From the NCBI RefSeq assembly GCF_022045235.1, contig NW_027266319.1, positions 12,090,001-12,154,000 of the forward strand: a stretch of 64,000 nt of DNA, written 5' to 3'. How positions within the stretch are numbered: the first letter of the stretch is position 1; every line of letters begins with the position of its first letter. A program made the position numbers and the translations under genes. The notes under the pieces are model-generated. The model was not told where the DNA came from. It saw only the letters and a list, made by a program, of their open reading frames with translations, and made no database searches. Positions 1,305-59,005 of this stretch are shown here, in pieces. This DNA comes from Haliotis cracherodii (Eukaryota).

Positions 1305-2510
1305 ATGTTTGACTTGCACAGATGTGTCCTTATCCTTCTTCTCTGTCACCTGACAATTGGCTCTGTTTCTTACAAAGAGAAAGATTTTCTGGACAATCTC
1401 ACCTTGAACTATGACCCCAAGATCCGTCCCGTGTTAGATGGTTCCAATACGATGGTGGGTATCACAATGGGATTGTCCACAATTTTATCTCTGGATGAAA
1501 AACAGGAAGTGCTCAGCTTTAAAGCATGGGTTTTAATGACATGGAAGGACCAACTTTTGGTGTGGAACATGACAGATGGCATTCCCGATACAGTGGCTAT
1601 ACCCTTGGTTGATGTATGGTCACCAACCATTATGAATCTTAACTCTGTGACAAACTTGAGGTATTTGAAAGATAATACGGATACTGTGCTTGTCTTTCGG
1701 GATGGAACAGTTATGTATTCCTACACAGGTAGGTTTGACATTGGATGCAAGGTGAATATCCAACAGTTTCCTTTTGATCCTCAGTCATGTACTTTTCACT
1801 TGCAAACATTCTATGCCCCTGTAACTAAGGAATATCTTCAAGTACAAGACAAGCATTTAAATCTAGAAACATATAAGGAAAGCGGAGAATTTCACCTTCT
1901 CAGTGCATCAATGGCACTACGGGAATACAAGACTCTCGGTGTGAGCAGTGACTGGATTGAAGTGACCTTAGTCCTGCAGAGACGAACTATGTTCTACATC
2001 CTAAACAACATCCTGCCTGTTGTGTTCCTGTCCTTTCTCAACACCTTCGCCTTCCTGTTGCCCGAGGAGAGCGGAGAGAAGATATCCTTGTGTGTCTCCA
2101 TCCTGTTGTCATATGCCATGTTCCTCACCCTCATCAACTCCTACCTACCAGCAAACTCCGACCACCTGTGTTTCTTTAGTGTCTATGTCACCCTGCTCGT
2201 GTTAATCAGTACGCTCACGTGCCTTGTCACAATCTTCATGTTCGTACTTAACACTCGTCTTCAAAGGGGCAAAGTTTGTCCAAGATGGCTGCCACTAGCT
2301 TGGGGATCAGACAGCAAAGTTGGGACCACTGAACCACGGGTTGAGATTGAAGACGTGGCTCCAAACCAATCAGATGATAAGGAGAAAGCAAACAAGACGA
2401 CAGACATGAAGGATTTGATAATGACCAGGTGTAACAAGGTAGCATTTGGGACTTTCTTCACACTCACAATTCTCATTAACCTGATATATTTCATCAGCGT
2501 ATCTCTATGA
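1305..2510 (+). CDS. Atypical nAChR-like Cys-loop ligand-gated ion channel subunit, subtype A (copy A1), single exon
   Basis: Uninterrupted ORF; the track starts at TTG 1224 and the first ATG is 1305. It has a signal peptide MFDLHRCVLILLLCHLTIGS, NYDPKIRPV, WKDQLLVW, Cys-loop CKVNIQQFPFDPQSC (C-x13-C), pre-M1 RR, LPEESGEK+M2, M3 and a C-terminal M4. No loop-C Cys-Cys. Confidence 0.93.
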   Translation: MFDLHRCVLILLLCHLTIGSVSYKEKDFLDNLTLNYDPKIRPVLDGSNTMVGITMGLSTILSLDEKQEVLSFKAWVLMTWKDQLLVWNMTDGIPDTVAIPLVDVWSPTIMNLNSVTNLRYLKDNTDTVLVFRDGTVMYSYTGRFDIGCKVNIQQFPFDPQSCTFHLQTFYAPVTKEYLQVQDKHLNLETYKESGEFHLLSASMALREYKTLGVSSDWIEVTLVLQRRTMFYILNNILPVVFLSFLNTFAFLLPEESGEKISLCVSILLSYAMFLTLINSYLPANSDHLCFFSVYVTLLVLISTLTCLVTIFMFVLNTRLQRGKVCPRWLPLAWGSDSKVGTTEPRVEIEDVAPNQSDDKEKANKTTDMKDLIMTRCNKVAFGTFFTLTILINLIYFISVSL

Positions 2511-2972
2511 AGAACATCATTCACTGATATGGCTTAATATGAACTGTGAGGGCTAAGAAAACTAACTTTTACTACTTTTACTTTTAGCTTGTAGGCTCCT
2601 GGAGACAACCGGGAAAAAGAATATATTCGATTGGTTGGTAGATGTATATTTTGACATATCTTGTGTGTGTTTTGGGGCATCAGTCACAATATAATAGGAG
2701 ATGCCATATTGTGACCTTTTGGTGTGAACAATTGACTTGCGTTTGATATCTTTAGAATGGAAAGAGTTTTTGCCACGTTTATTTGCATTCGTTCATCCTA
2801 ACTTCACAGTAGGGAAGGCTGGCATGATATTCGGGTGATGATTATTATAATCCTACATTCAGCCGGGGAATAACACACAGTATAACATACGAGGTAAGTA
2901 TTACTGATCAGGTGGGGATAGAGACCAATGACGAACTTCCATTTGAATTGTATTCAGTCAGTTTATAAATTA

Positions 2973-4199
2973 TACTCTCCAAAAAAAGAAACGCAAAATT
3001 GATAGTTTGGGTCATAAAAGCAAAATAAGCGGACCAAGAGGGGCAAAATGAAGATGTTTAATGTGTTTAGTGTCAGTGACAAATTTCCTAGATCAAAATG
3101 ATCATAACAAGGACATGCAAACCATTAGTCGTGAAACACGTACGATTCGGAAAAACGCACCCAGTGCATTAATAAAAGGGCCATGGAGCTGCACGTCCTG
3201 CAAGTGCAGCAGCACTATTAAAATGCAGGATTATTTTTTGCCTAGCATCTGCGTCAGTCGTACAGTGACACTTTTACAACATGCCAAGATTAACAGAAGT
3301 GCAAAGAAACAACGTCTTTGGTGCAGGCAGGGGAATCCAGATCAGTTGCAGCCAGGGTTTTCAATGAACAAGGCTATGAGATCGGTTTTAACAACATGGG
3401 TCAACACGTGATCGGCCAAGGTCGGGACGACCAAGAGTAACCACCCCCGCTCAAGATCGTTACATCTGACTGCGCTAAAGGACGACCACAGCGACCTCAA
3501 CTGCATCCCAAATACCCGGACTGCGCAGAATCTCCGACCAGACCGTACGGTACCGTTTAAGAGCAGCAGGTCTACGAGCAAGACGTCCTGTTCGACGTGT
3601 CATATTCAGTCGACACCACTGTCAACAACGACTGCATTGGTGTCGTCAACACACGATATGGCCTCAACTGCAATGGAGAGATGTCTGGTTCAGTGACGAA
3701 TCAAGATTTCTCCACCGTCGAGGGGATGGAAGAGCACGGGTCTATAGACGTCGGGGAGAACGTTACGCCGGAAGCTGCGTACAGGAAGTGGACAGGTTTG
3801 GTGGGGGTAGCGTCATAATGTGGGCAGAATTCTCTCATCATGGCAGGACATGTTTGGTCCATAGCCAGGGCTACACAACAACAACGTTTATGTTCTCCCC
3901 TGGCCCTCCTGATCCCCGGATTTGAACCCGATAGAGCACCTGTGGGATGAATTGGATAGACGGCTATGCCGACTTCAACAACAACCCTAGACGTTGCAGC
4001 AGTTAGCTTTAGCGTTGCAGGCCGAGTTGGCTACCATCGCCCAGGATGTGATTCGCATACTCGTCTCTTCCATGGGCAGGAGATGTCAGGCCGCTATCGA
4101 TTCCAACCGGGGACATACACGTTATTGAAGGTAGTTGACCTTCACCCTGGACATTTCCTGTACCGATAACTGAGATGACTACAATCACGAAGTGTTCTC
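2973..4199 (+). mobile_element. Degenerate Tc1/mariner transposon, family A (transposase pseudogene)
   Basis: TA followed by a TIR-like tactctccaaaaaaagaaacgcaa. Frameshifted MPRLTEVQRN (3281), WFSDESRF, PDLNPIEHLWDELDRR and GHTRY*. No right TIR seen. Confidence 0.85.
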
Positions 4200-4465
4200 G
4201 ACCCGTGAAGATCCGGGCTAGAATAGGTCTTCAGCAACCCTTGCTTGACGTAAAAGGTGACTGTGCTTGTCGTAAAAGGCGACTAACGGGATCGGGTGGT
4301 CGGGCTCGATGACTCGGTTGATGCATGTCATCGATCCCAAAGGCGTGGATGGATGCTCGTGATATTAATCACTGGATTGTCTGTTCCAGACTCGATTATT
4401 TACAGACCGCCGTCATATAGTTGGAATATTGCTGAGTGCGGCGTTAAACAACAAACCAACCAACC
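4200..4465 (+). mobile_element. SINE-like family 1, full length with a duplicated head hairpin (co-duplicated at 22,809, 33,594, 42,998 and 60,695)
   Basis: 10-bp TSD aagtgttctc (4,190-4,199 / 4,466-4,475); (AACC)n tail. Confidence 0.88.
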
Positions 4466-5242
4466 AAGTGTTCTCTCTACAATTTTCCCTCAATACCTTG
4501 TACAGTTCCTCGTATAAATGTATTTTCCCGACACACACAAATCTGGCTTTGCATTTATCATTTTCAAGAGTATACTTCAATCGTTCAGTCACCTAATTAC
4601 ATTTTTTATTTGTGTCTTTGTTACCCAGTTCTAATGTAACTAATGTATTTAACCTTGTAAGTTACTCAGTGATGATGTTGTTATTCTGTTGTTGTTGTTT
4701 TTGACAGTTTATGATAGCTGATGGATAGTCAATTGACGATTGCTTCGATGGTGGAGTCATTTAGAGTATTTTACTTGTGTGTTTGTTACCAAGTTTTAAA
4801 TTTTACTGATTCACTTCAATTGTGATTAAGAATAAATATGCTTTTCATTATGTTCTTGTTGTTGTTATTCTATTGACAAATTGTGTTTGATAGTTTATGA
4901 TAGCTGCTGAATCGGGAAACCCATATTACTGTCAGGAAAGTCCACATATATACAGATGAACATTACTCGGCACCTATCATCTGTTAGTTCGAACGATTCA
5001 TTCGGAACGTTACCGTCTGATTTAACGGGTTTTCACTTGATATCACAGGCGTATGTGTGATATCCTGCGGGAATATTTCTACTGGAAGCATTAATTATTC
5101 CTTGTTTTATTCCCTCAATGTAGAGCACAAGGCACAGTAACAACAAGTGCCATCTTTTAACGTCGTTTGGTATGACGTGGCCAATGGATTGAAACACCAA
5201 CCTTCTGCTTCTCTGGTCAGACGCTTTATCAACAAGGTCACG

Positions 5243-5451
5243 TTTTTGTTTGTTTGTTTGTTTGTCTGTTGTTTAACGCCACACTCAGCAATATTCCAGC
5301 TAAATGACGGCGGTCTGTAAATAATCGAGTCTGGACCAGACAATCCAGTTTATTGACATCATGAGCATCGATCCACGCAATTAGGATACGATGACATGCA
5401 TCAAACAAGACAGTGAGCCTGACCACCCAATCCCGTTAGTCTCCTCTTACA
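5243..5451 (-). mobile_element. SINE-like family 1, 5'-truncated (also ~27,446, ~34,668, ~44,055 and 61,738)
   Basis: Reverse complement of the family 1 body with an (AAAC)n tail. Confidence 0.8.
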
Positions 5452-5534
5452 GATGGTTTCAGAGTTGGGTCTATTATAAGCTCTATAGTTGGTAGTGAAA
5501 TGATGTAAGTGGGTGATAATTTATGTTCTCTTTC

Positions 5535-5767
5535 GGGGGCACGGGTGGCCCAGTCGTCTAAGGCGCCGCGATTCTCTGTGCAGAGTTGCGTCCCTTGGGC
5601 ACGCCAGAAACCTATGATTGTGGGTTCGAATACCGGGTTTGTCAGCACCATACCCGTGCTCGTGGGTTTCAACGAAATGGTAAACGTCTCCCACATTAAG
5701 CTGACACACTGCGATATAACTGGAATAATGTTAAAAGCGGCGTTAAACCCAACTCACTCACTCACTT
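5535..5767 (+). mobile_element. tRNA-derived SINE family 2 (also 27,729, 34,942, 44,313 and 62,030; diverged minus-strand copies at ~16,767-17,022 and ~54,655-54,904)
   Basis: A box tggcccagtcg (5,546), B box ggttcgaatacc (5,623), (CACT)n tail and TSD tgttctctt. Confidence 0.8.
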
Positions 5768-7290
5768 TGTTCTCTTCATGTTTCAAATTTCTCTGCAATG
5801 TTTATTTATGTTATTGCTGTTACCAAAATACCAATTTCTGTTTTTCATGCACCCAGTTTCTTTTCCTTTTTTTGGTTTGCACACTTACCATTGTCAAATG
5901 TATGGTAATCCTACACATAATTGTATGACATTTAAATAAGGATACTTTACAACTGTGTATTACAGTACTTAAACGCGGAAAGTAACAAGTGAAGGCACAT
6001 CGCTATTTGGTGTTAAAATGCCCACTGAAGAAAGGCTCAAACGGTAAGTGGCACATTAACAAGAGAAAGCAAAGAAATGTCGTCATCTCGACTTTTTCAA
6101 GAGGTATGTCGTCCGCAACCCTGTACATTTACATGTTTGAAATCGTTTTAGGGGTGGACCATTTGATTTCTAGGGGGAGGGGGGACACGCAGTCCATAAT
6201 TCTGGGTAAATAAACAACTCAGCCTTCATCTGCTTGAGAAACAAATCTCATCCTTAATAAAAAAAGACCGCATTAAGGCCATCCTCATCTATACAGAGTT
6301 TTCATGAGCGAAGCCACAATCGTAGACTGTATGCCCGTAGCGCTTATTTCTTGTTACTAAAAAATAGTATCAATGTTAAGCAAGATGACCCGGTATAGAA
6401 GTGATCAAGTCGTTTTAAGATGTTATATAGTAGTAATTGGATGGTAATTTGCCTGAACTTCGGTATTACCCTCATACTTCGGTCCTGATGACTTGGGATG
6501 AGCGAGAGGTACAATGTCAGTACCCGAGGGACCTTGGATCTTAATTTACCGTAGTTCCTTCAGCAATCACAAAGGATGTTCTTCGTTTAACAGCTTTTAT
6601 TCTCTTTGTGTTGCCGGTCAACCCACTCTATTTGTCACTCAATCAAGAGACTCCGGCCGCAAGGCTTCAGTCCCAGTCAAAATGCTGGTGGCTTAAGATT
6701 GTTTCCGAGTACGACTTTAGTGACTGTCAGACAAGAGTGGGCGCACACCAGAACCCCGACTTGGGGCCTGACATTCCCCTAAAACCCGGTTCCTACATCA
6801 CAAGAGTTCTCATTGGTCTGCAACCAGAACCCCTTCAACAGACCATTCCAACCTACCCGCAGTTCTTTACCAGAATCCTTATTAGGTCTTTCGTAAGACG
6901 AACACCAATTTCCAGGAATCTGAACTCTCTTCCCTAATACCATATATTTTTTTATCTGTTGGTTGGTCTCTTATTATTATTCCTCTATTTCTGGTAGCGC
7001 GGATGTTATTTCTAACCTTATTACCTTGCCATGATACCTGATAGAACCCCTTGCTCTCGTGGCGTAGTGCTGCTCTCACCTTGAAGGGCTGTATATCTAC
7101 TCAAGGATGGTACCTACTCAAGAATGTTGCCAATGCTTGTCATGATATCTGGTATACATTCCCTCTTATTTCTATGACATACTGTTATAATTTCCTCTTA
7201 ATTATCCAAATACATATTACAATTAATGACTTAATGATTTAACTTCCCTTTAATTATCTAACTGCCTATTTTAATTTCAGGTCTATATTA

Positions 7291-7494
7291 CTTGTCATAT
7301 GAGGCGACTAACGGGATCGGGTGGTCAGGCTCGCTGACATGGTTGATGCATGTTATCCTTTCCCCATTGAGTGGATTGATGCTCATGATGTCAATCACTG
7401 GATTGTCTGGTCCAGACACGATATTTTACAAACTGTCGTCAAATAGCTGGAATATTGCCGAGTGCGGTGTTAAACAACAAATAACCAACCAACC
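7291..7494 (+). mobile_element. SINE-like family 1, 5'-truncated (also 29,478, 36,663 and 45,762)
   Basis: ggcgactaacgggatcgggtggtcagg ... gctggaatattgccgagtgcggtgttaaacaac. Confidence 0.8.
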
Positions 7495-8592
7495 TTCATC
7501 GCCAATCAGAGTTAGCAGCGCTGTTTGCGGTCCATTGTCAGGTTGCCAGATGCTCTTGCTTGAATTTCTTCCATGCAATCATACCATCCACACTGAAATC
7601 CATCGCTTTCGGAGCCAGTATATTCTGCATTTTAATCATTTAGCAACCCTTTAACTTCTAACATCATGAATTATTTCCTGTGAATACTGACAAGTCAACT
7701 TGAGCCGTTTCATTTTATTCTACCGGAGGTTCATTACACTAGACTTGGAGTAAATGTTCTCTGCTATTTTATCGGTCATAAATGAATGTTATTTTTTGAC
7801 TATGCAAACGTTACTGTGGCACTTGTGTTGTTCAGTAGTTGTAGCATCTAAATGGCATGTGAAAATGGAGTGCTCTTTTCGCTACTCGGGGTCTCCCTTT
7901 TTCAAAGGAAGTACCCTGCCATTGTGATAACCTGCAGAAAACACAAATGCAAGAAATCAATTTCAGGTGTCCAATGTTGTGTCTTGGCTGGTATATGGCT
8001 AAAAACGGCGTAAATCCAATACCCTCAATTACACTGTACGATTCCTGTAATGAACGGGACAAACTGAAAACATTGGACATTCTCCATGTGTTATAACGTA
8101 ATCAGTACATCTCAAAGATGTGATGCTGATGACGTTGTATCCTACAAATAACATTATGGTAAGCCATAATATTTCAGAACATTCTTTATATGAGTAGTTT
8201 TGAAAGATTTAACTTTATTACTGGATAACATCAAAATCAGACGTTAGTATACGTGTACGTCATCCACTCAAGGACAACATTCAATGCTCTACTGAATGTG
8301 CGTCATTTAATGTTATGGTTATAATACTATGTCAAAACACTGACTTGATAATTACAATTACAGTAATGTGGGGACGCAACATAACATTGACAAAGCTATT
8401 TCAGTTGTGATGGAGAACACCAAGTCAGTTAATGACTAATTGATCCTCGCTTTGGCACGTTTCTCCTGGATACGAACAATACCTATATAACGTCATGAAT
8501 CATTGCTAATCTTCAGTATCTGCGTGTGGCCGTTTTCATTGCGGTTGTGCTGTTTCTTGCAAAACATTAACCACGGTGATATAGTTTACGAA

Positions 8593-9813
8593 ATGATGTT
8601 TGATTTCTGCAGATGTTTCTTTATCCTTCTTCTCTGTCACCTGACAATTGGCTCTGTTTCATATAAAGAGAAAGAATTCCTGGCCAATCTCACCTTGAAC
8701 TATGACCCCAAGATCCGCCCCGTATTAGATGGTTCCAAGACGATTGTGTATGTCAGTTTGGGATTGTCCACAATATTATCTCTGGATGAAAAACAGGAAG
8801 TGCTCAGTTTTAAAGCATGGGTTATAATGGTCTGGCAGGACCAGCTTTTGGTGTGGGACATGACAGACGGCATTCCCGATACAGTGGCTATGCCCTTGGT
8901 GGATGTATGGTCACCAACCATAATGAATCTTGACTCTGTGACAGACCTGAGGTATCTTTATGATGAAACGGATTCTGTGCTTGTCAATAAGGATGGTACA
9001 GTTATATATTCCTACACAGGTAGGTTTGACATAGGATGCAAGGTGAATATACAACAGTTTCCTTTCGATCGTCAGTCATGCACTTTTCACTTGCAAACAT
9101 TCTATGCCCCTGTAACTAAGGAATATCTTCAGGTAGCAAACACGTATTTAAATCTGGAAAAATACAACCAAAACGGAGAATTTCACCTTCTCAGTGCATC
9201 AATAGCGTTGCAGAAATTCAAGATTTACAATGCCAGTAATGAATGGATAGAAGTGACCCTGGTCCTACAGAGACGACCTATGTTCTACATCCTCAACAAT
9301 ATCCTGCCCGTTGTGTTCCTGTCCTTTCTCAACACCTTTGCCTTCCTGCTGCCCGAGGAAAGTGGTGAGAAGATGTCCCTGTGTGTCTCCATCCTGTTGT
9401 CATATGCCATGTTCCTCACACTCATCAACTCCTACCTACCAGCAAACTCCGACCACCTGTGTTTCTTCAGTGTCTATGTCACCCTGCTCGTGTTAATCAG
9501 CACGCTCACGTGCCTTGTCACAATCTTCATGCTGATATTACACACTCATCTTCAAAGGGGCATGGCTAGTCCAAGATGGCTGCCAATTGCTTGGGGATCA
9601 GACAGCAAAGTTGGGACGACTGAACCACGGGTTAAGAATGACGATGTAGCTCCATACCAATCAGATGTGAAAGACAAAGACAAAGACAAAGCAAACAAGA
9701 AGTTAGACATGAAGGATGCGATAATCACCAAATGTAACAAGGTGGCATTTGGAACGTTCTTCACACTCACAATTCTTGTTAATCTGATATTTTTCATCTG
9801 CGTCTCTCTTTGA
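8593..9813 (+). CDS. Atypical nAChR-like Cys-loop subunit, subtype B (copy B1), single exon
   Basis: Same architecture; Cys-loop CKVNIQQFPFDRQSC; loop C IALQKFKIYNASNEW. The track starts at TTG 8503 and the first in-frame ATG is 8593. Confidence 0.93.
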   Translation: MMFDFCRCFFILLLCHLTIGSVSYKEKEFLANLTLNYDPKIRPVLDGSKTIVYVSLGLSTILSLDEKQEVLSFKAWVIMVWQDQLLVWDMTDGIPDTVAMPLVDVWSPTIMNLDSVTDLRYLYDETDSVLVNKDGTVIYSYTGRFDIGCKVNIQQFPFDRQSCTFHLQTFYAPVTKEYLQVANTYLNLEKYNQNGEFHLLSASIALQKFKIYNASNEWIEVTLVLQRRPMFYILNNILPVVFLSFLNTFAFLLPEESGEKMSLCVSILLSYAMFLTLINSYLPANSDHLCFFSVYVTLLVLISTLTCLVTIFMLILHTHLQRGMASPRWLPIAWGSDSKVGTTEPRVKNDDVAPYQSDVKDKDKDKANKKLDMKDAIITKCNKVAFGTFFTLTILVNLIFFICVSL

Positions 9814-12825: not shown

Positions 12826-14370
12826 TACTCACACGCAAAAGAAACGCAAGTCAAGTATGCAGTATACATGTTATTTATTTTCAACAGTAAAGACAAGAAA
12901 TACTATGAGGGCAAGATTGACAAAAATTTGACTGAAGACAGTTTAATGGATTAAAAGACAGATGACATAATTGGGTTTTTTCAAATGTTAAGGGCTTACA
13001 CAGTTTCGGGTCAATACCCAAAACGTCAGTAAAAACATGGTGTGACCACCATTAGCATTGATCACTGCCACACATCTCCTGTACATTGAGTGGATCAGAC
13101 GATTTGTGAAGGCCCTAGGGATCCTCCTGCACACATCCAGAGCAGCTGTGCGTAGTTCATCGGCAGTTGTAGGGACTGGGCGCATATTGTGCAGATGCCT
13201 TTGAACCTCATCCCAAAAGTGTTCCATGGGGTTCAGATGAGGGCTGAGGGCTGGTCACAGTAGGACACGGATGTTGTGTTTTTGCAGAAAGGTCATGGTA
13301 GCTCTGGCAAAATGGGGACGAGCGTTGTCCTGCTGGAAAATGTGTTGTTGATGTTGTGCAAAAAGTGGAACAACGTGGGGTCTGATCACTTGGTCGATAT
13401 ACCGCTGAGCAGTGACGCCGTGTCCCCGACCTTGACCAACATTCAGAAGTCACATGGGTCCAAGTCTCGCATTAAGTCTAATTCCTGCCCATATCATGAC
13501 GCTAGGTCCACCCCATTTATCCCTTTCCACAACGTTTCTCTCAGGGAAACGATCACCTCAACGCCGCCAAATTCTGACTCTTCCGTCTGCATGGGAGACA
13601 CAAAAGCGATTTTCATCAGAGAAAATGACACGCCTCCACTCACGATGACGCCAATTGTGATGACCCTGTGCCCACTGAAGTCGTGCTTGTCGATGCCGTG
13701 GTTGGAGAACAGGACGACGTGCTGGTCGGCGACATCTGAGGTTGTTGGAACGGATACGTCGGATCACAGTGTCCCGGCTAATGTGTCGATTATGTGTTCC
13801 TATGGTCTGTCGAGCACTTTCACTTGCAGCTAGGAACGGATGACGCTGGTGTTGACGGGTAATCTGCCGATCATGTCGAGGTGTGGTGACCCTAGGACGA
13901 CCGCTCCGAGGAAGGTCATCTGTGGTCTGTGTAGCATTGTATCGATGCAGGAGACGGTAAATTGTGGGTATGTTAACGTTGAAATGACGGGCAACATCTT
14001 CGACAGACTCTCCAGCTTCCAAACGTCCGATAGCCTGGTTTTTCTGAATTTGAGTAAGGCGTGGCATTGTTGACCAAGGAGTGGTTGGTCCAAGAATCGG
14101 CAACAGTTCTATACCCAATACAGTTCGTGACAGTTCGTGCATTTCCGATTTCGCGAGAAATGGGTGCATGATACCCACATATTCATTGAAATGGTGCGTT
14201 TTGGAGATTCGTTTTTTATGTTGCGTTTTTACTCGGGGCTTCCAAAATGCAACCAAAAATATTGATAACACCATCAGGCTTCACTACATGCTAAAACTCG
14301 TATCAATTTATGGTTCCGTGTTTGTTACCTATTAGCTTAAAGCAACTTGCGTTTCTTTTGCGTGTGAGTA
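12826..14370 (-). mobile_element. Tc1/mariner transposon, family B, with both TIRs; transposase disrupted
   Basis: Perfect 26-bp TIRs (tactcacacgcaaaagaaacgcaagt / acttgcgtttcttttgcgtgtgagta) flanked by TA. MPRLTQIQKNQAIG HTH, RSGRPR, VIFSDENRF, QQDNARPH and EHFWD motifs; stop after IWRR. Confidence 0.93.
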
Positions 14371-15956: not shown

Positions 15957-15959
15957 ACT

Positions 15960-19916: not shown

Positions 19917-21122
19917 ATGTTTGACTTGCACAGATGTGTCCTTATCCTTCTTCTCTGTCACCTGACAATTGGCTCTGTTTCTTACAAAGAGAAAGATTTT
20001 CTGGACAATCTCACCTTGAACTATGACCCCAAGATCCGTCCCGTGTTAGATGGTTCCAATACGATGGTGGGTATCACAATGGGATTGTCCACAATTTTAT
20101 CTCTGGATGAAAAACAGGAAGTGCTCAGCTTTAAAGCATGGGTTTTAATGACATGGAAGGACCAACTTTTGGTGTGGAACATGACAGATGGCATTCCCGA
20201 TACAGTGGCTATACCCTTGGTTGATGTATGGTCACCAACCATTATGAATCTTAACTCTGTGACAAACTTGAGGTATTTGAAAGATAATACGGATACTGTG
20301 CTTGTCTTTCGGGATGGAACAGTTATGTATTCCTACACAGGTAGGTTTGACATTGGATGCAAGGTGAATATCCAACAGTTTCCTTTTGATCCTCAGTCAT
20401 GTACTTTTCACTTGCAAACATTCTATGCCCCTGTAACTAAGGAATATCTTCAAGTACAAGACAGGCATTTAAATCTAGAAACATATAAGGAAAGCGGAGA
20501 ATTTCACCTTCTCAGTGCATCAATGGCACTACGGGAATACAAGACTCTCGGTGTGAGCAGTGACTGGATTGAAGTGACCTTAGTCCTGCAGAGACGAACT
20601 ATGTTCTACATCCTAAACAACATCCTGCCTGTTGTGTTCCTGTCTTTTCTCAACACCTTTGCCTTCCTGTTGCCCGAGGAGAGCGGAGAGAAGATATCCT
20701 TGTGTGTCTCCATCCTGTTGTCATATGCCATGTTCCTCACCCTCATCAACTCCTACCTACCAGCAAACTCCGACCACCTGTGTTTCTTTAGTGTCTATGT
20801 CACCCTGCTCGTGTTAATCAGTACGCTCACGTGCCTTGTCACAATCTTCATGTTCGTACTTAACACTCGTCTTCAAAGGGGCAAAGTTTGTCCAAGATGG
20901 CTGCCACTAGCTTGGGGATCAGACAGCAAAGTTGGGACCACTGAACCACGGGTTGAGATTGAAGGCGTGGCTCCAAACCAATCAGATGATAAGGAGAAAG
21001 CAAACAAGACGACAGACATGAAGGATTTGATAATGACCAGGTGTAACAAGGTAGCATTTGGGACTTTCTTCACACTCACAATTCTCATTAACCTGATATA
21101 TTTCATCAGCGTATCTCTATGA
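19917..21122 (+). CDS. Atypical nAChR-like Cys-loop subunit, subtype A (copy A2)
   Basis: Near-identical to A1 (offset 18,612 bp); intact ORF; FPFDPQ variant. Track start is TTG 19836. Confidence 0.93.
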   Translation: MFDLHRCVLILLLCHLTIGSVSYKEKDFLDNLTLNYDPKIRPVLDGSNTMVGITMGLSTILSLDEKQEVLSFKAWVLMTWKDQLLVWNMTDGIPDTVAIPLVDVWSPTIMNLNSVTNLRYLKDNTDTVLVFRDGTVMYSYTGRFDIGCKVNIQQFPFDPQSCTFHLQTFYAPVTKEYLQVQDRHLNLETYKESGEFHLLSASMALREYKTLGVSSDWIEVTLVLQRRTMFYILNNILPVVFLSFLNTFAFLLPEESGEKISLCVSILLSYAMFLTLINSYLPANSDHLCFFSVYVTLLVLISTLTCLVTIFMFVLNTRLQRGKVCPRWLPLAWGSDSKVGTTEPRVEIEGVAPNQSDDKEKANKTTDMKDLIMTRCNKVAFGTFFTLTILINLIYFISVSL

Positions 21123-24731: not shown

Positions 24732-25937
24732 ATGTTTGACTTGCACAGATGTGTCCTTATCCTTCTTCTCTGTCACCTGACAATTGGCTCTGTTTCTTAC
24801 AAAGAGAAAGATTTTCTGGACAATCTCACCTTGAACTATGACCCCAAGATCCGTCCCGTGTTAGATGGTTCCAATACGACGGTGGGTATCACAATGGGAT
24901 TGTCCACAATTTTATCTCTGGATGAAAAACAGGAAGTGCTCAGCTTTAAAGCATGGGTTTTAATGACATGGAAGGACCAACTTTTGGTGTGGAACATGAC
25001 AGATGGCATTCCCGATACAGTGGCTATACCCTTGGTTGATGTATGGTCACCAACCATTATGAATCTTAACTCTGTGACAAACTTGAGGTATTTGAAAGAT
25101 AATACGGATACTGTGCTTGTCTTTCGGGATGGAACAGTTATGTATTCCTACACAGGTAGGTTTGACATTGGATGCAAGGTGAATATCCAACAGTTTCCTT
25201 TTGATCGTCAGTCATGTACTTTTCACTTGCAAACATTCTATGCCCCTGTAACTAAGGAATATCTTCAAGTACAAGACAAGCATTTAAATCTAGAAACATA
25301 TAAGGAAAGCGGAGAATTTCACCTTCTCAGTGCATCAATGGCACTACGGGAATACAAGACTCTCGGTGTGAGCAGTGACTGGATTGAAGTGACCTTAGTC
25401 CTGAAGAGACGAACTATGTTCTACATCCTCAACAACATCCTGCCTCTTGTGTTCCTTTCCTTTCTCAACACATTCGCCTCCCTGTTGCCCGAGGAGAGCG
25501 GAGAGAAGATATCCATGTGTGTCTCCATCCTGTTGTCATATGCCATGTTCCTCACCCTCATCAACTCCTACCTACCAGCGAACTCCGACCACCTGTGTTT
25601 CTTTAGTGTCTATGTCACCCTGCTCGTGTTAATCAGTACGCTCACGTGCCTTGTCACAATCTTCATGTTCGTACTTCACACTCGTCTTCAAAGGGGCAAA
25701 GTTTGTCCAAGATGGCTGCCACTAGCTTGGGGATCAGACAGCAAAGTTGGGACCACTGAACCACGGGTTGAGATTGAAGGCGTGGCTCCAAACCAATCAG
25801 ATGTTAAGGAGAAAGCAAACAAGACGACAGACATGAAGGATTTGATAATGACCAGGTGTAACAAGGCAGCATTTGGGACGTTCTTCACACTCACAATTCT
25901 CATTAACCTGATATATTTCATCAGCGTATCTCTATGA
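24732..25937 (+). CDS. Atypical nAChR-like Cys-loop subunit, subtype A (copy A3)
   Basis: Intact A-type ORF with several private substitutions (NTTVG, LPLV, FAS, ISM) and FPFDRQ. Track start is TTG 24651. Confidence 0.93.
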   Translation: MFDLHRCVLILLLCHLTIGSVSYKEKDFLDNLTLNYDPKIRPVLDGSNTTVGITMGLSTILSLDEKQEVLSFKAWVLMTWKDQLLVWNMTDGIPDTVAIPLVDVWSPTIMNLNSVTNLRYLKDNTDTVLVFRDGTVMYSYTGRFDIGCKVNIQQFPFDRQSCTFHLQTFYAPVTKEYLQVQDKHLNLETYKESGEFHLLSASMALREYKTLGVSSDWIEVTLVLKRRTMFYILNNILPLVFLSFLNTFASLLPEESGEKISMCVSILLSYAMFLTLINSYLPANSDHLCFFSVYVTLLVLISTLTCLVTIFMFVLHTRLQRGKVCPRWLPLAWGSDSKVGTTEPRVEIEGVAPNQSDVKEKANKTTDMKDLIMTRCNKAAFGTFFTLTILINLIYFISVSL

Positions 25938-30713: not shown

Positions 30714-31919
30714 ATGTTTGATTTCTGCAGATGTTTCTTTATCCTTCTTCTCTGTCACCTGACAATTGGCTCTGTTTCTTACAAAGAGAAGGAATTCCTG
30801 GCCAATCTCACCTTGAACTATGACCCCAAGATCCGCCCCGTATTAGATGGTTCCAACACGATTGTGTATGTCAGTTTGGGATTGTCCACAATATTATCTC
30901 TGGATGAAAAACAGGAAGTGCTCAGTTTTAAAGCATGGGTTATAATGGTCTGGCAGGACCAACTTTTGGTGTGGAACATGACAGACGGCATTCCTGATAC
31001 AGTGGCTATGCCCTTGGTGGATGTATGGTCACCTACCATAATGAATCTTGACTCTGTGACAGACCTGAGGTATCTTTATGATGAAACGGATTCTGTGCTT
31101 GTCAATAACGATGGTACAGTTATATATTCCTACACAGGTAGGTTTGACATAGGATGCAAGGTGAATATACAACAGTTTCCTTTCGATCGTCAGTCATGTA
31201 CTTTTCACTTGCAAACATTCTATGCCCCTGTAACTAAGGAATATCTTCAGGTAGCAAACACGTATTTAAATCTGGAAAAATACAACCAAAACGGAGAATT
31301 TCACCTTCTCAGTTCATCAATAGCATTGCAGAAATTCAAGATTTACAATGCCAGTAATGAATGGATAGAAGTGACCTTAGTCCTGAAGAGACGAACTATG
31401 TTCTACATCCTCAACAACATCCTGCCCGTTGTGTTCCTGTCCTTTCTCAACACCTTCGTCTTCCTGTTGCCCGAGGAAAGTGGTGAGAAGATGTCCCTGT
31501 GTGTCTCCATTCTGTTGTCATATACCATGTTCCTCACCCTAATCAACTCCTACTTACCAGCGAACTCCGACCACCTGTGTTTCTTCAGTGTCTATGTCAC
31601 ACTGCTTGTGTTGATCAGCACGCTCACGTGCCTCGTAACAATCTTCATGTTCGTACTTCACACTCGTCTTCAAAGGGGCAAAGTTTGTCCAAGATGGCTG
31701 CCACGAGCTTGGGGATCAGACAGCAAAGTTTGGACAACTGAACCACGGGTTGAGATTGAAGGCGTGGCTCCAAACCAATCAGATGATAAGGAGAAAGCAA
31801 ACAAGACGACAGACATGAAGGATTTGATAATGACCAGGTGTAACAAGGTAGCATTTGGGACTTTCTTCACACTCACAATTCTCATTAACCTGATATATTT
31901 CATCAGCGTATCTCTATGA
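30714..31919 (+). CDS. Chimeric nAChR-like subunit: B-type extracellular domain with A-type intracellular loop and M4
   Basis: B residues through GEKMSL, then A residues from FMFVLHTRLQRGKVCPRW to YFISVSL. B-type upstream flank and A-type downstream flank. Track start is TTG 30624. Confidence 0.92.
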   Translation: MFDFCRCFFILLLCHLTIGSVSYKEKEFLANLTLNYDPKIRPVLDGSNTIVYVSLGLSTILSLDEKQEVLSFKAWVIMVWQDQLLVWNMTDGIPDTVAMPLVDVWSPTIMNLDSVTDLRYLYDETDSVLVNNDGTVIYSYTGRFDIGCKVNIQQFPFDRQSCTFHLQTFYAPVTKEYLQVANTYLNLEKYNQNGEFHLLSSSIALQKFKIYNASNEWIEVTLVLKRRTMFYILNNILPVVFLSFLNTFVFLLPEESGEKMSLCVSILLSYTMFLTLINSYLPANSDHLCFFSVYVTLLVLISTLTCLVTIFMFVLHTRLQRGKVCPRWLPRAWGSDSKVWTTEPRVEIEGVAPNQSDDKEKANKTTDMKDLIMTRCNKVAFGTFFTLTILINLIYFISVSL

Positions 31920-49488: not shown

Positions 49489-50805
49489 ATCTTTGGAATG
49501 TTTTATGATAATTGTGTAAAAAAGAAAATAATTTATTTTTTATTGTTGTTGAAATGTTGCCGTTTTAAATCTTATCATATTTAATAGCTAATCATCACCA
49601 AGAAAGTCCACCTTACTATCTCAGGTCACGTGCACCCATTGCACCCGACGTGGAGAATGTCAGACCTATAAAGAGTAGTAATGAAATGATGGATAGTGTT
49701 GGACACCAAGGGAATCCTATACAATCGTTCAGCGAAGGACGTGTGGGTGATCCTAATAGGCAGCCAAGTACACTTACTGCACCTCAGCCTCGCTGGTCTA
49801 ACCATCACGTACCCAATGACAACTCTCCTGATCCATCTACAAAGAGGAGTGAAATATATTGGCATATGATAAACATGGGCACAAATCTCTTGCTAAACCT
49901 GAACAAATATTGTCTTCAGCAACCCATACTTGCTGTAAAGGCGACTATGCTTGTCGTAAAAGGCGACTAACGGGATCGGGTAGTCAGGCTCGCTGACTTG
50001 GTTGATACATGTCATCGATCCCAATTGCGTGGATCGATGCTCATGATATTAATCACTGAATTATCTGGTCCAGACTCGATTATTTACAGACCGCCGTCAT
50101 ATAGCTGCAATATTGCTGACCAAACCAACCAACCAACCAAGCATGATGAAAATCCTTTTGACATGGTTTGAATTCCGAAAAATAAAATAACATTATTTGT
50201 CAAACAGTGACAAGACTGGCACGCTTATCTACTATTTCATTACCATCCGTGTCTGCCGGGATACATACAAAATCACATGATATACTAGTATATTTAGAAT
50301 CGAGATAATTGCCTATACTCTAGATGTCATGCAAACTTTCACTTTTCGATGCAGTTGCCCCAAACTCAATAGCACGTGCAGCTTCCATCAAGTCAGTAAA
50401 AAGGATTGATCAAGACGAGGCCTATTTGTGCACAGAGCATTCTTCTGATCACAATTCCAATTTTCACCTTTGATCCAAATTTGTTTGATATCATATGCTG
50501 GCTACATAGGCGCTAAAACACTTATACAGGGACGAGGGTTGGGCTTATTGGAAGTTCTGGCAAATTTGATTCAATTCCTTCAAACACTGCTTTGATTATC
50601 GGCCTCAAAGTTTTCTTTTGTAGTCCAGCAGCCCCACTTTAACACAGACAATTTCTTTTGTTTCATTCATGCCACTAATTACAATGGCTGAAGCTTGACT
50701 GATATGAGTTCTAGGCCATAGATCGCAGTTTCCCTTTAAAATTGATAGGGTTTCGGAGGGTCAACTTGAAAAAAAGGTTTCCAAGGGAATTTTGGGGATA
50801 ATATA

Positions 50806-55060: not shown

Positions 55061-57311
55061 TGTATACAATTTTGCAGAAAATACAAACCTCATAAAGACC
55101 CTGATTTGGTTTTAGAAAGCACTCCTATTAAAGGTGTAAAAGAGGTTCTTGGGTATTATTGTTTATCTCCATTTAACCTTTTTACCACACATAAAACATT
55201 TGAAAAATAAATGCCTGAAGGCACTTGACCTTCTGAAAGTCGTTTCAAGTTCAAAGTGTACAGGGCACTCACTTATACGCTCTAAACTGGATTATGGCTT
55301 CATCATCTATGGGGGACTCTGTAAAAGTAATTTAAAAGTATTAGATAGTATTCATCAGGCTTTGCCTCGGAGCCTTCAGAACATTCCCTCTTAATAGCCT
55401 GTATGTGGAAGCTGATGACCCATCGCTAAAAACAACGTTGCATTAAATCATCTTTACAGTATATTTCTAAACTGCATTCTGATCATTCTAATCCAGCCTA
55501 CGAATGTGTTTTTAATCCTCCATATAAAGAACAAAAATACATCTCTTACTTCACCCCTAGGAATCAGAATACAATCTCATATTTCTGCTTCTCAAATTAA
55601 TCTTGAAAATATAGCCCCAGCCAAACTCCTGTCTTCACCACCATGGCAGTTGGTAAAGCCAGTAGTGGATACAACATTAATTAAACTAAAGAAATCTGAT
55701 ACAAATCAACTAATTTATCAACAACAATACAATGAATTACGAAGCACATATGATGCTTACAAATCTATATTTACAGATGGATCCAAGGATGGTGACGCAG
55801 TTGCCAGTGCCACCTTCATTGGATCCAGGACTATTTCGTCAAGACTACCGGATAATTGTTCCATTTTTACAGCTGAATCACATACTTTATCAACAACACT
55901 AGAGTACATTTGTAAACAATCGAAACATAAACAATTTATTATAGTTTCAGATTCTTTATCCTGTCTTCAGACAATACAAAATCAGTCTTGCAAACATCCA
56001 CTTTTAATCGAAATCCTTGAATTATATAATGATCTTGCTACTGGCCAATACGACATCGTCTTTCGTTGGTTACCCAGCCATGTTGGAGTCATTGGTAACA
56101 CAATGATCGATGCGTCTGCAAAAGCACCTCTTTACACATCCGTGACACCACTTTTAATTCCATACAGTGATTATAAACCTGTGATCAGATGCTACATCCG
56201 AGATCTTATGCAACAGAAATGGGACACCCAAGTAGGTATCAACAAATTACATGAAATTAAACCAAATATCGGTTACACCTACTTGGGTTGTCAGTCCAGA
56301 CTTGAAGAGGTAATTTTACGACTATGTCGTATTGGCTATAGTAGATATACTCACGAATATTTATTGAAAGGTGCAGATCGTCCATTTTGTATCCCTTGTG
56401 ATGAGAGAAAATCACGGTCAAGCATGTCCTGCTTGACTGTATTGATTTTGCCATCACAAGGGATAACTATTTCACATCATCATCTCTCAAAGATCTTTTT
56501 AATAATATTACTTCTCTTTTAATTATTGGGTTTTTAAAAGAAATAGAATTGTATAATAATTTTTGATAATGTCTTGTATAAAATAAATGATCTTTTAAAA
56601 TTGGTAGAATGAATTTATATCTGAGTTTGTTACTGACTGTATCCTCAAAAGGGGGTTGACGTAGTGAAAAATAATTGTCCCCCTGAGAGGATATCGTAAG
56701 TCCATGTCATTCAAAGAATATTTCTGCTTATTACTCCTTTAAACGTAGAATATTTGTAATTTTATTTGTTGCTAACTTTGCGTACAATCGCCAGGTGCTG
56801 AACGAATGATGTAAATCCTGCTGGGTTCCATGCAGGTTGCAAAGGTACTGTAAGTCCCCATGGTCCCCCCGACCCGTGAAGATCCGGGGTAGAATAGGTC
56901 TTCAGCAACCCATGCTTGCCGTAAAAGGCGACTAACGGGATCGGGTGGTCAGGCTCGCTGACTTGGTTGATGCATGTTATCGATCCCAATTGCGTGGATC
57001 GATGTTCATGATGTAAATCACTGGATTGTCTGGTCCAGACTCGATTATTTACAGACCGCCGTCATATAGCTGGAATATTGCTGAGTGCGGCGTAAAACAA
57101 CAACCAAACCAAACCAAAACCCCATGGTCCTCAGAATGGTGGTCTACCTTCAGTTGCTGGCGATCTAGAGCCCGTTTTTATCTTGTATTGTAACGTATAG
57201 TGCCATCCTTTTTTTATGATTCCATACTAGTTTGATATCTTTTTCTGTGAGAAGTCTAGTTATTTTACTGTCATTTGTTGGCAGGTTTTTCAAATGTTCA
57301 CTCACTCACTC
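55061..57311 (+). mobile_element. Second copy of the 5'-truncated RNase H LINE
   Basis: Nearly identical to 17,178-19,428. The RNase H frame 55,506-56,522 is open (TAT instead of TAA). Confidence 0.85.
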
Positions 57312-57799
57312 CTAACATATACGATTAAACATGGTTATTAGAAGTAGTTTTGTAAAAGCTAAATTCATTATTGCTTTAGCAAATAACAATGATGGTTCAA
57401 CATACACTCACATGAATATTCAAAGCGTTAACAAATGTGTTCCATGCAATAAGATGACATAATTATAACATAACGTGATTGTATTCATGTCTTACAATCG
57501 TACAAACCACTCTGCTTTAAGCACAGAAGTTTTGTTGCTTTTATTTACATATACAATGTCCGAACATCGATAGTGTAATGACATTCAAGTGTTATGTTGG
57601 GGCGCAGCATCAGATTGACAAAGCTATTCAGATGGTGATTGTGAAATTCAGATAATGACTAAACGGTTTCTCTTGGATACGAACAATACCTTTGTAATAC
57701 TATACATCATTTCTAATATTGAGTCTCAGCGTGTGGCCGTTTCCATTGCAGTTGTGCTGTTTCTTATTCGACGTTAACCACACTGACATAGTCTTGGAA

Positions 57800-59005
57800 A
57801 TGTTTGACTTGCACAGATGTGTCCTTATCCTTCTTCTCTGTCACCTGACAATTGGCTCTGTTTCTTACAAAGAGAAAGATTTTCTGGACAATCTCACCTT
57901 GAACTATGACCCCAAGATCCGTCCCGTGTTAGATGGTTCCAATACGATGGTGGGTATCACAATGGGATTGTCCACAATTTTATCTCTGGATGAAAAACAG
58001 GAAGTGCTCAGCTTTAAAGCATGGGTTTTAATGACATGGAAGGACCAACTTTTGGTGTGGAACATGACAGATGGCATTCCCGATACAGTGGCTATACCCT
58101 TGGTTGATGTATGGTCACCAACCATTATGAATCTTAACTCTGTGACAAACTTGAGGTATTTGAAAGATAATACGGATACTGTGCTTGTCTTTCGGGATGG
58201 AACAGTTATGTATTCCTACACAGGTAGATTTGACATTGGATGCAAGGTGAATATCCAACAGTTTCCTTTTGATCGTCAGTCATGTACTTTTCACTTGCAA
58301 ACATTCTATGCCCCTGTAACTAAGGAATATCTTCAAGTACAAGACAAGCATTTAAATCTAGAAACATATAAGGAAAGCGGAGAATTTCACCTTCTCAGTG
58401 CATCAATGGCACTACGGGAATACAAGACTCTCGGTGTGAGCAGTGACTGGATTGAAGTGACCTTAGTCCTGAAGAGACGAACTATGTTCTACATCCTAAA
58501 CAACATCCTGCCTGTTGTGTTCCTGTCCTTTCTCAACACCTTCGCCTTCCTGTTGCCCGAGGAGAGCGGAGAGAAGATATCCTTGTGTGTCTCCATCCTG
58601 TTGTCATATGCCATGTTCCTCACCCTCATCAACTCCTACCTACCAGCAAACTCCGACCACCTGTGTTTCTTTAGTGTCTATGTCAGCCTGCTCGTGTTAA
58701 TCAGTACGCTCACGTGCCTTGTCACAATCTTCATGTTCGTACTTAACACTCGTCTTCAAAGGGGCAAAGTTTGTCCAAGATGGCTGCCACTAGCTTGGGG
58801 ATCAGACAGCAAAGTTGGGACCACTGAACCACGGGTTGAGATTGAAGGCGTGGCTCCAAACCAATCAGATGATAAGGAGAAAGCAAACAAGACGACAGAC
58901 ATGAAGGATTTGATAATGACCAGGTGTAACAAGGTAGCATTTGGGACTTTCTTCACACTCACAATTCTCATTAACCTGATATATTTCATCAGCGTATCTC
59001 TATGA
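57800..59005 (+). CDS. Atypical nAChR-like Cys-loop subunit, subtype A (copy A4)
   Basis: Intact A-type ORF at offset 56,495 from A1; FPFDRQ. Track start is TTG 57719. Confidence 0.93.
   Translation: MFDLHRCVLILLLCHLTIGSVSYKEKDFLDNLTLNYDPKIRPVLDGSNTMVGITMGLSTILSLDEKQEVLSFKAWVLMTWKDQLLVWNMTDGIPDTVAIPLVDVWSPTIMNLNSVTNLRYLKDNTDTVLVFRDGTVMYSYTGRFDIGCKVNIQQFPFDRQSCTFHLQTFYAPVTKEYLQVQDKHLNLETYKESGEFHLLSASMALREYKTLGVSSDWIEVTLVLKRRTMFYILNNILPVVFLSFLNTFAFLLPEESGEKISLCVSILLSYAMFLTLINSYLPANSDHLCFFSVYVSLLVLISTLTCLVTIFMFVLNTRLQRGKVCPRWLPLAWGSDSKVGTTEPRVEIEGVAPNQSDDKEKANKTTDMKDLIMTRCNKVAFGTFFTLTILINLIYFISVSL

What the first reader, a model, noticed from the sequence alone, without database searches (positions are those of the whole stretch)
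1305..59005. Tandem array of eight intronless, atypical nAChR-like genes: a candidate chemotactile-receptor-like chemosensory family
Seen: eight intact single-exon Cys-loop subunit ORFs on one strand within 58 kb, in two subtypes plus a chimera, lacking acetylcholine-binding determinants and with a short intracellular loop. Known: canonical nAChR genes are multi-exon and mostly dispersed. Cephalopod chemotactile receptors are tandemly arrayed, intron-poor, ACh-insensitive nAChR derivatives, and bivalves also have intronless nAChR expansions. Inference: this is a young, still-expanding sensory receptor cluster in a probably non-cephalopod mollusc, perhaps an independent origin of contact chemoreceptors for substrate, food or larval settlement cues.
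Basis: partly seen in the sequence, partly recalled or inferred. Interest (0 to 1): 0.92.

Follow-up and report, generated by a model that had tools for sequence, protein, structure and literature searches.

The report
Abalone orphan nicotinic-like channel gene array
Eight intact, intron-free genes for nicotinic-receptor-like ion channels that have lost most acetylcholine-binding residues sit head to tail in the black abalone genome, but this is one of about twenty such arrays there, belongs to a mollusc-wide expansion already published, and a taste or touch role remains untested.

Summary
The window (Haliotis cracherodii, C56:12.09-12.154 Mb) carries eight intact single-exon Cys-loop subunit genes on the + strand: four A, three B and one B/A chimera. 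They have a degenerate acetylcholine site and a loop of about 36 residues between M3 and the MA-M4 helix.

- **Extent:** the array is larger than reported, with 13 intact genes and one pseudogene over 107 kb.
- **Selection:** the genes are under purifying selection (omega 0.1-0.38). The pore and LBD scaffold are tightly constrained (omega about 0.1). The binding-site loops run at omega 0.75-1.0 and hold 27 of 33 fixed A/B differences in the ligand-binding domain.
- **Recombination:** a 279-nt TM1-3 block is at least 90% identical in all 14 members, even where the ligand-binding domains share only 41% residues. This points to gene conversion, and the chimera is a snapshot of that process.

The chemosensory reading is untested. 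No RNA run holds the genes. The proteins are no closer to octopus CRT1 or squid CRB1 (21-23% identity) than to vertebrate nAChRs or 5-HT3.

The genome holds more than 100 such intronless genes in about 20 arrays. This matches the published mollusc expansion (Jiao 2019; MolluscaGenes 2026). The scan already followed up other arrays of this genome on other DNA, with the same verdict. I call it a new member of a known kind, of modest interest.

The parts
1305..2510 (+). A1, intact single-exon Cys-loop subunit gene, 401 aa, subtype A
   Evidence: ORF. Pfam LBD E 2.4e-35 and TM E 8e-13. Best PDB sequence hit is alpha7 nAChR, E 7e-41. AlphaFold pLDDT 87.7.
8593..9813 (+). B1, subtype B, 406 aa. It has two adjacent Met codons, and the conserved Met is at 8596. 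It carries the longest KD repeat in the intracellular loop.
19917..21122 (+). A2, subtype A, 99.5% identical to A1
24732..25937 (+). A3, subtype A, 97.5% identical to A1
30714..31919 (+). X, an in-frame B/A chimera. The ligand-binding domain to mid-M3 is B-like; the end of M3, the loop and M4 are A-like.
   Evidence: The upstream flank is B-like and the downstream flank A-like.
31619..31650 (+). Crossover interval of the chimera. It lies between the last B-diagnostic and the first of an unbroken run of A-diagnostic bases, in M3. A mixed zone lies just upstream.
37956..39167 (+). B2, subtype B. An extra in-frame ATG lies 30 codons upstream, at 37866.
46582..47784 (+). B3, subtype B. An extra in-frame ATG lies at 46492. 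It is identical to database protein P0002.
57800..59005 (+). A4, subtype A, 99% identical to A1
1983..2261 (+). TM1-3 pore block of A1 (residues 227-319). It is at least 90% identical in DNA in all 14 cluster members and nowhere else in the genome.
1171..1304 (+). Upstream stretch shared by the A, B and C genes, probably 5' UTR or core promoter. A/B homology ends here and about 37 nt after the stop codon.
13558..14274 (-). Tc1/mariner-type transposase remnant (HTH_Tnp_Tc3_2) between genes. It recurs upstream of the window.
55506..56522 (+). Retroelement ORF with an RNase H domain inside the duplicated spacer

Best explanation
The window holds the core of a Haliotis-specific cluster of intronless, nAChR-derived pentameric ligand-gated cation-channel subunits. 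The cluster has 13 intact genes and 1 pseudogene.

**How it grows.** It expands by tandem segmental duplication of 5-15 kb units rich in transposon remnants. Unequal crossover and gene conversion keep reshuffling it. The B/A chimera and the mosaic C copies are products of this. One TM1-3 pore block has been spread over all members.

**How selection acts.** The pore, the gating elements and the beta-sandwich scaffold are kept nearly unchanged. These include the Cys-loop FPFD motif, the -1' Glu of GEK and the 9' Leu. The loops lining the intersubunit ligand pocket (G, D, E, F, C) change freely.

**Likely function (inferred).** The encoded subunits most likely form cation channels gated at the usual interface pocket by something other than acetylcholine. 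This is inferred because the cation-pi Trp of loop B, the Tyr of loop A and the Cys pair of loop C are gone.

**Shown versus inferred.** Shown: gene structure, family, selection pattern, recombination, and lineage restriction. Inferred: channel function, cation selectivity, and a ligand other than ACh. Unknown: the ligand, the tissue, and whether the role is sensory.
For: - **Genes and domains:**
- **Fold:** AlphaFold pLDDT 87.7; Z 30.9 to alpha7; TM-score about 0.8 to nAChRs.
- **Pore motifs:** kept in the alignment to alpha7.
- **Degenerate aromatic box:**
- **Selection, whole gene:** omega 0.25-0.38 between subtypes and 0.10 among B copies.
- **Selection, by region:** TM1-3 omega 0.08-0.18; LBD scaffold 0.08-0.21 against binding loops 0.74-1.01 (Fisher p about 1e-5 for A vs B); 27/91 loop positions against 6/115 other positions are fixed A/B differences (p 2e-6).
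- **Recombination:** segmental duplicates are 94-99% identical. The chimera is shown. C1 is identical to B3 over alignment columns 101-170 and has no amino-acid difference from A1 over columns 41-80. Segment trees disagree.
- **Shared pore block:** U1m and U2 against A/B have saturated dS in the LBD but dS 0.35-0.5 in TM1-3. The TM1-3 DNA is 90-91% identical to A1, the same as B and C. It is more like A1 (88-89% aa) than the pore of the closer H. asinina orthologue is (80%).
- **Lineage:** the clade has 100% support on a long stem. The H. cracherodii A/B/C/X copies form their own group (99%). Nearest outgroups are Patella, Lottia and other Haliotis paralogues, also with degenerate sites.
Against: - No transcript evidence was found. 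No RNA run holds the sequence, and the one possible RNA run has zero depth over the gene.
- The low dS of the pore block could partly reflect constraint on synonymous sites rather than conversion.
- An omega near 1 in the loops does not separate relaxed from diversifying selection, and loops vary in all Cys-loop receptors.
- TrpD and perhaps one or two loop C aromatics remain, so some cholinergic or heteromeric use is not excluded.
- The copy number rests on a single assembly.
Confidence: 0.7

Rival explanations
1. The cluster encodes contact chemoreceptors that work like cephalopod chemotactile receptors. They would be expressed in peripheral sensory cells (tentacles, epipodium, lips, foot, larval apical organ) and gated by environmental molecules such as algal or settlement cues. 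They would have arisen independently of the cephalopod CRs.
For: - The genes share the published CR hallmarks: intronless, tandemly arrayed, ACh site lost, and a cationic pore kept (review PMC11526382).
- Variation is concentrated in the pocket loops over an invariant pore.
- The expansion is recent and lineage-specific.
- A 2026 preprint raises the same possibility for divergent molluscan nAChR clades (PMC13174522).
Against: - There are no expression data and no known ligand.
- Identity to CRT1 and CRB1 is only 21-23%, no higher than to vertebrate nAChRs or 5-HT3.
- The same features hold for more than 100 genes in this genome.
- In bivalves such genes are expressed in gill, gonad and embryos and respond to stress or infection (PMC6896357), so the features do not by themselves predict a sensory role.
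- Loop omega does not exceed 1.
Confidence: 0.15
2. The proteins are non-alpha (complementary or structural) subunits. They would co-assemble with an alpha-type subunit encoded elsewhere into ACh-gated heteromers, so they would be ordinary cholinergic components present in many copies.
For: - TrpD of the complementary face is conserved in every copy, and there is no loop C Cys pair, as in beta subunits.
- The gating and pore elements are conserved.
- NCBI names the orthologues alpha- or beta-like nAChR subunits.
Against: - The loop B Trp and loop A Tyr are replaced. Both are still present in the one canonical non-alpha subunit compared here, octopus P0245.
- The clade sits on a long branch, far from the alpha7, insect alpha2 and octopus P0245 group.
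- The complementary-face loops D, E, F and G are the most variable parts. That is unexpected if they had to keep binding ACh.
Confidence: 0.12
3. The array is functionally silent DNA. It would be either retrogene copies drifting toward pseudogenes or an over-duplicated assembly of fewer real copies.
For: - No RNA evidence was found.
- In bivalves more intron-poor than intron-rich nAChR genes show no or low expression (PMC6896357).
- Blocks are 98-99% identical.
- One true pseudogene lies at the distal end of the cluster.
Against: - All 13 frames are intact.
- Omega is 0.1 in the pore and scaffold and 0.10 among B copies that have dS 0.06-0.10.
- Copies differ in flanks and order, and the window has no gaps.
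- Related models from H. rubra, H. asinina and H. rufescens exist, several of them recorded with the same longest-contig length and so probably on one scaffold.
Confidence: 0.03

Closest known systems
Lineage-specific intronless, tandemly arrayed nAChR expansions of molluscs (Jiao et al. 2019, PMC6896357; MolluscaGenes preprint 2026, PMC13174522)
   Same: The coding regions are intronless. The arrays are tandem, and published arrays reach 12 genes. Clades are lineage-specific, the ACh-binding residues are often lost, and gastropods are included. Here there are more than 100 single-ORF genes in about 20 arrays in one genome.
   Different: Abalone was not in the 2019 gene set. This clade is confined to Haliotis, plus one unnamed 49-51% relative. 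It shows very recent copies (dS below 0.03) and a pore block shared by conversion across deeply diverged ligand-binding domains. The passages I read did not describe that last point.
Cephalopod chemotactile receptors (octopus CRT1, squid CRB1; van Giesen 2020, Allard 2023 and Kang 2023, as summarised in PMC11526382)
   Same: They derive from nAChRs, are intronless, have expanded in number, have lost the ACh site, and are cation channels. Variation is concentrated in the ligand pocket.
   Different: Structural alignment gives only 23% and 21% identity (Z 22.3 and 22.1), below alpha7 (26%, Z 30.9). No CR chain is among the 60 best PDB sequence hits. The nearest relatives are gastropod genes. No sensory expression, hydrophobic ligand or excess of replacement changes has been shown.
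Alpo4, the orphan nAChR-like receptor of the annelid Alvinella pompejana (PMC10338036)
   Same: It is a lophotrochozoan orphan Cys-loop subunit without the loop C Cys pair and is not gated by ACh or serotonin. The fold is similar (Z 25.7, rmsd 2.5, 22% identity).
   Different: Alpo4 keeps the aromatic ligand-binding residues, including the loop B Trp. It is an isolated gene rather than a young array.
Vertebrate alpha7 nAChR
   Same: It is the best sequence and structure match (E 7e-41, Z 30.9). The Cys-loop, the GEK -1' Glu, the 9' Leu and TrpD are shared.
   Different: Identity is 26%. TyrA, TrpB and the Cys pair are lost. The intracellular loop is about 36 residues rather than over 100. The gene is intronless and multicopy.

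Membership tests
[quoted passage not shown] | An N-terminal beta-sandwich ligand-binding domain with a 13-residue Cys-loop, followed by four TM helices | tested here: met
   Pfam PF02931 plus PF02932. The Cys-loop is C148-C162 with the FPFD motif. AlphaFold shows M1-M4. Z is 20-31 to solved pLGICs.
Cationic nAChR/5-HT3 branch | Closest to nAChR and 5-HT3 subunits, with the -1' Glu (GEK) at the inner mouth of M2 and the 9' Leu gate | tested here: met
   The 60 best PDB hits shown are all nAChR or 5-HT3A. GEK and the 9' Leu align with alpha7. Ion selectivity itself was not measured.
Acetylcholine-gated nAChR (functional sense) | An aromatic box (TyrA, TrpB, TyrC1, TyrC2, TrpD) and, for alpha subunits, the vicinal Cys pair of loop C | tested here: not met
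   TyrA is Leu112, TrpB is Phe169, and the Cys pair is absent. TrpD (W75) is kept. The loop C Tyr positions depend on the alignment.
Molluscan intronless nAChR expansion (Jiao 2019) | Intronless coding region, tandem array, lineage-specific clade in a mollusc | tested here: met
   Single ORFs. An array of 13+1 genes. A Haliotis-specific clade with 100% support. Host named.
Cephalopod chemotactile receptors (CR) | Membership of the CR clade | tested here: inconclusive
   No CR sequence could be obtained by reference for a tree. Indirect evidence argues against membership: 21-23% identity to CRT1 and CRB1, lower than to alpha7; CRs are absent from the top 60 PDB hits; the nearest relatives are gastropod genes.
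Cephalopod chemotactile receptors (CR) | Intronless, multicopy, ACh-binding residues lost | tested here: met
   These traits are shared by more than 100 other genes of this genome, so they do not discriminate.
Cephalopod chemotactile receptors (CR) | Expression in peripheral chemosensory cells | not testable with these tools
   No RNA run holds the stretch. The one possible RNA run has zero depth at 1201-2800.
Cephalopod chemotactile receptors (CR) | Insensitive to ACh and gated by poorly soluble environmental molecules | not testable with these tools
   This needs electrophysiology.

The most novel reading that the evidence does not exclude
The abalone cluster would be an independent, gastropod origin of nAChR-derived environmental chemoreceptors. 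One pore module is kept uniform by gene conversion. Recombination and relaxed or diversifying selection generate new ligand pockets (A, B, C, U types and chimeras). The receptors would be tuned to cues such as algal, biofilm or larval settlement signals.
Probability: 0.12. Interest if true: 0.75.

Novelty: new member of a known kind. Interest (0 to 1): 0.33.

Why it matters
If these channels prove to be sensory, abalone would give a second, independent case of a neurotransmitter receptor turned into a chemoreceptor.

As it stands, the cluster is a clean, well-resolved example of a known process. It shows how molluscan nAChR-like families grow: segmental duplication, in-frame crossover inside the invariant pore, and conversion of the pore block, while the pocket loops diverge.

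There is also a practical point. In the protein collection searched, the public models that cover this locus include fusions of halves of neighbouring genes (P0001, P0005). No full-length A-type protein was found there. Counts of this family taken from annotation may therefore be unreliable.

Tried and rejected
1. **RNA evidence.** The look-up of sequencing runs found no RNA holder. Read laying showed that runs X1, X3 and X4 cover the gene and its flanks alike, so they behave as DNA, with contigs about 95-97% identical. The possible RNA run X6 covers only the repeats. Expression stays open.
2. **Tree with cephalopod CRs.** The profile search was swamped by insect alpha2 subunits, because I had put an insect sequence in the query alignment. 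The only octopus protein reached (P0245) keeps the full aromatic box, so it is an ordinary non-alpha subunit and not a CR. The CR papers PMC10228259 and PMC7605239 are not held.
4. **Positive selection.** Window-wise and loop-wise pN/pS reach 0.7-1.6 but never clearly exceed 1. No site-model program was run.
5. **Retroposition hallmarks between A and B.** Homology ends about 134-235 nt upstream of the start and about 37 nt after the stop. No poly(A) tail or target-site duplication was seen. One C copy has a (TA)n run at that point.
6. **Complex prediction for A+B.** Not run.
7. **Assembly artefact.** Considered and rated unlikely, because the copies have distinct flanks and there are no gaps. 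It was not tested with raw reads.


Full report
**What is there**

The window has no gaps. It holds nine ORFs of at least 250 aa. Eight lie on the + strand and encode 401-406-aa proteins from a conserved Met that is followed by a signal peptide. The three copies scanned, one of each type, match Pfam Neur_chan_LBD (E 1e-33 to 2e-35) and Neur_chan_memb; the other five are 96-100% identical to one of them. The ninth ORF (55506-56522) is a retroelement RNase H ORF. The whole coding region of each gene, from signal peptide to the end of M4, is one open frame. The genes are therefore intronless in the coding part. Introns in the UTRs cannot be excluded.

Names given by public sources identify the host as the black abalone, Haliotis cracherodii. 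The window is C56:12090001-12154000 of a 1.18-Gb assembly.

**Subtypes and chimera**

There are four A copies, 97.5-99.5% identical in protein. There are three B copies, 97.8-98.5% identical. One gene, X, is a hybrid. A and B share about 83% of residues and 86% of bases.

Of 118 bases that distinguish A from B, X is B-like up to window 31619 and A-like from 31650 onward. A short mixed zone lies before the switch. Its upstream flank is B-like and its downstream flank A-like. X is therefore an in-frame crossover or conversion product, with the junction in M3.

**The array is larger than the window**

A six-frame search of the genome and the fetched flanks show five more intact genes upstream. 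These are U1 on the minus strand, then U2, C1, C2 and C3. One pseudogene with stops and a frame change lies 3.7 kb beyond the window end. In total there are 13 intact genes and 1 pseudogene at C56:12051515-12158946.

The spacers carry Tc1/mariner and reverse-transcriptase remnants and very high-copy repeats. The units are segmental duplicates, 94-99% identical over 1.5-9 kb. The proximal neighbour is a GH31 glucosidase-like ORF.

**What the proteins are**

- The best solved relatives by sequence are alpha7 nAChRs (E 7e-41). Other nAChR subunits and 5-HT3A follow.
- The AlphaFold model is confident (pLDDT 87.7). It superposes on alpha7 (Z 30.9), muscle and alpha4beta2 subunits, 5-HT3, the orphan annelid receptor Alpo4 (Z 25.7), octopus CRT1 (Z 22.3, 23% identity) and squid CRB1 (Z 22.1, 21% identity).
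- Kept: the 13-residue Cys-loop with FPFD, the GEK motif with the -1' Glu typical of cationic channels, the 9' Leu, and TrpD.
- Lost: loop A Tyr is now Leu, loop B Trp is now Phe (Ser in U1), and the loop C Cys pair is absent. The two loop C tyrosines align differently in two alignments, so I do not call them.
- The M3-M4 loop is about 36 residues and is predicted to be disordered.

**Are they working genes?**

Pairwise Nei-Gojobori estimates give omega 0.25-0.38 between subtypes. Among B copies, which differ by dS 0.06-0.10, omega is 0.10. By region, TM1-3 has omega 0.08-0.18 and the intracellular loop 0.66-0.77 in comparisons with A.

Inside the ligand-binding domain I took the canonical binding loops from alpha7 numbering, defined from my own knowledge and approximate. 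Those loops run at omega 0.74-1.01, while the rest of the domain runs at 0.08-0.21 (Fisher p about 1e-5 for A vs B). Of the 33 fixed A/B differences in the domain, 27 fall in 91 loop positions and 6 in 115 others (p 2e-6). Loops C, F, E, G and D carry them; loop B carries none.

This is the pattern of a constrained channel with a free pocket. It does not separate relaxed from diversifying selection, and loops are the variable parts of all such receptors.

**Recombination and a shared pore block**

The C copies are mosaics. C1 has no amino-acid difference from A1 over alignment columns 41-80. It is identical to B3 at the DNA level over columns 101-170. It has its own loop C. Trees of four gene segments disagree with each other.

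U1 and U2 share only 41% of ligand-binding-domain residues with A and B, and dS there is saturated. Yet their TM1-3 block has dS of only 0.35-0.5. That block is 90-91% identical in DNA to A1, no less than B and C are. The pore block of U1 and U2 (88-89% aa identity to A1) is also closer to A1 than that of the H. asinina orthologue (80%), whose ligand-binding domain is much closer (69%).

The block occurs at 90% identity or more only in the 14 cluster members. The next best match in the genome is 78% over 96 nt.

The simplest reading is that gene conversion spread one pore block through the cluster. This probably happened before the split of H. cracherodii from H. rufescens, because the H. rufescens U1 orthologue carries the block as well. 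Constraint on synonymous sites is a weaker alternative that I could not exclude.

**Kinship**

A full HMMER scan of 1.84 billion representative proteins found 9481 relatives. Only abalone proteins and one unnamed 392-aa protein exceed 50% identity. The next hits are at 39% or less.

In an ML tree of 88 proteins the cluster clade has 100% support on a long stem. The H. cracherodii A, B, C and X copies group together (99%), apart from the H. rubra and H. asinina orthologues. The nearest outgroups are Patella, Lottia and other Haliotis paralogues. These also lack the aromatic box. Vertebrate alpha7, insect alpha2 and an ordinary octopus non-alpha subunit sit in a distant group.

The cluster is therefore not an ordinary conserved neuronal subunit. 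It also shows no special link to cephalopod CRs. A proper tree including CRs could not be built, because no CR sequence was obtainable by reference.

**How common this is**

The A1 protein finds 103 scored matches among 320 candidates in this genome. The Pfam ligand-binding-domain model finds 150 scored matches among 456 candidates. Most are full-length domains inside uninterrupted frames of 370-450 aa. By my count of those tables they fall into about twenty arrays on at least a dozen contigs. The window's array is one of them.

The literature already describes this. Jiao et al. 2019 (PMC6896357) report 64-217 nAChR genes in molluscs, gastropods included. Many are intronless, arrays reach 12 genes, binding residues are often lost, and expression is seen in gill, gonad and embryos and changes under stress or infection. 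The MolluscaGenes preprint (PMC13174522) sorts 3,586 molluscan sequences into 15 clades. It places CRs as a mostly cephalopod clade, with a broader 'CR-like' clade alongside. It explicitly suggests that divergent clades might serve chemosensation.

Earlier follow-ups of this scan reached the same verdict for other arrays of this genome (s1-829567 and s1-820425). Notes on this window had already listed the pocket/pore contrast, the dismantled aromatic cage and the chimera. I tested all three and they hold.

**Expression**

No public RNA run holds the stretch. The holders found behave as DNA: their contigs cover gene and spacers alike, about 95-97% identical. The one possible RNA run has zero depth over 1201-2800. 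The sensory hypothesis therefore has no support or refutation from these data.

In the protein collection searched, two proteins named for this species at this locus (P0001, P0005) fuse the C-terminal half of one gene to parts of the next. No full-length A-type protein was found in that collection.

**Verdict**

The best explanation is a Haliotis-specific, recently expanding clade of orphan cation-channel subunits derived from nAChRs. It evolves by duplication, crossover and conversion, with a conserved pore and a variable pocket. The ligand is probably not acetylcholine. It is a new member of a known kind.

- The CR papers were not held.

Noticed in passing
window 1305-9813, and C56 upstream of the window (proteins P0001, P0005): Two proteins named 'uncharacterized protein' of H. 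cracherodii are fusions. P0001 joins the C-terminal half of A1 to parts of B1. P0005 does the same with genes upstream of the window. No full-length A-type protein was found in the protein collection.
   Followed up: partly
window 9600-9700, 38950-39050 and 47570-47650 (intracellular loop of B1, B2, B3): The three B copies differ in the length of a Lys-Asp repeat in the intracellular loop. B1 has two more KD units than B3, and B2 has one more. This is a small coding microsatellite.
   Followed up: no
window 201-800, 3001-4600, 5001-5800: These are very high-copy interspersed repeats. The summed contig depth reaches millions in the DNA runs, and many joints link them to each other. They probably supply the homology for the rearrangements.
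   Followed up: no
window 13558-14274 (-) and L003:4954-5670 (-): An identical 238-aa ORF with Tc1/mariner transposase HTH domains sits in two copies of the duplicated spacer.
   Followed up: partly
window 55506-56522 (+); homologous stretch about 17630-18650: A 338-aa RNase H ORF is open in one copy of the 9-kb duplicated block. No ORF of that length is listed in the other copy.
   Followed up: no
L004:3746-4946 (C56:12157746-12158946): A pseudogene of the same family lies 3.7 kb past the window end. It has two stop codons and a frame change near residue 190. Its TM1-3 block is still 94% identical to A1.
   Followed up: partly
L001 and L008 (C56:12039721-12042531, -): A 936-aa uninterrupted ORF with trefoil and GH31 glucosidase domains borders the cluster on the proximal side. 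An ORF of that length without interruption is unusual for an animal gene of this family.
   Followed up: no
window 37866 and 46492: B2 and B3 have an extra in-frame ATG 30 codons upstream of the conserved start. In B1, X and the A copies that codon is not ATG. The annotated start of B2 and B3 is therefore ambiguous.
   Followed up: no
L002:8995-9120: A long (TA)n microsatellite starts right where the A/B/C homology ends, after the stop codon of C1.
   Followed up: no
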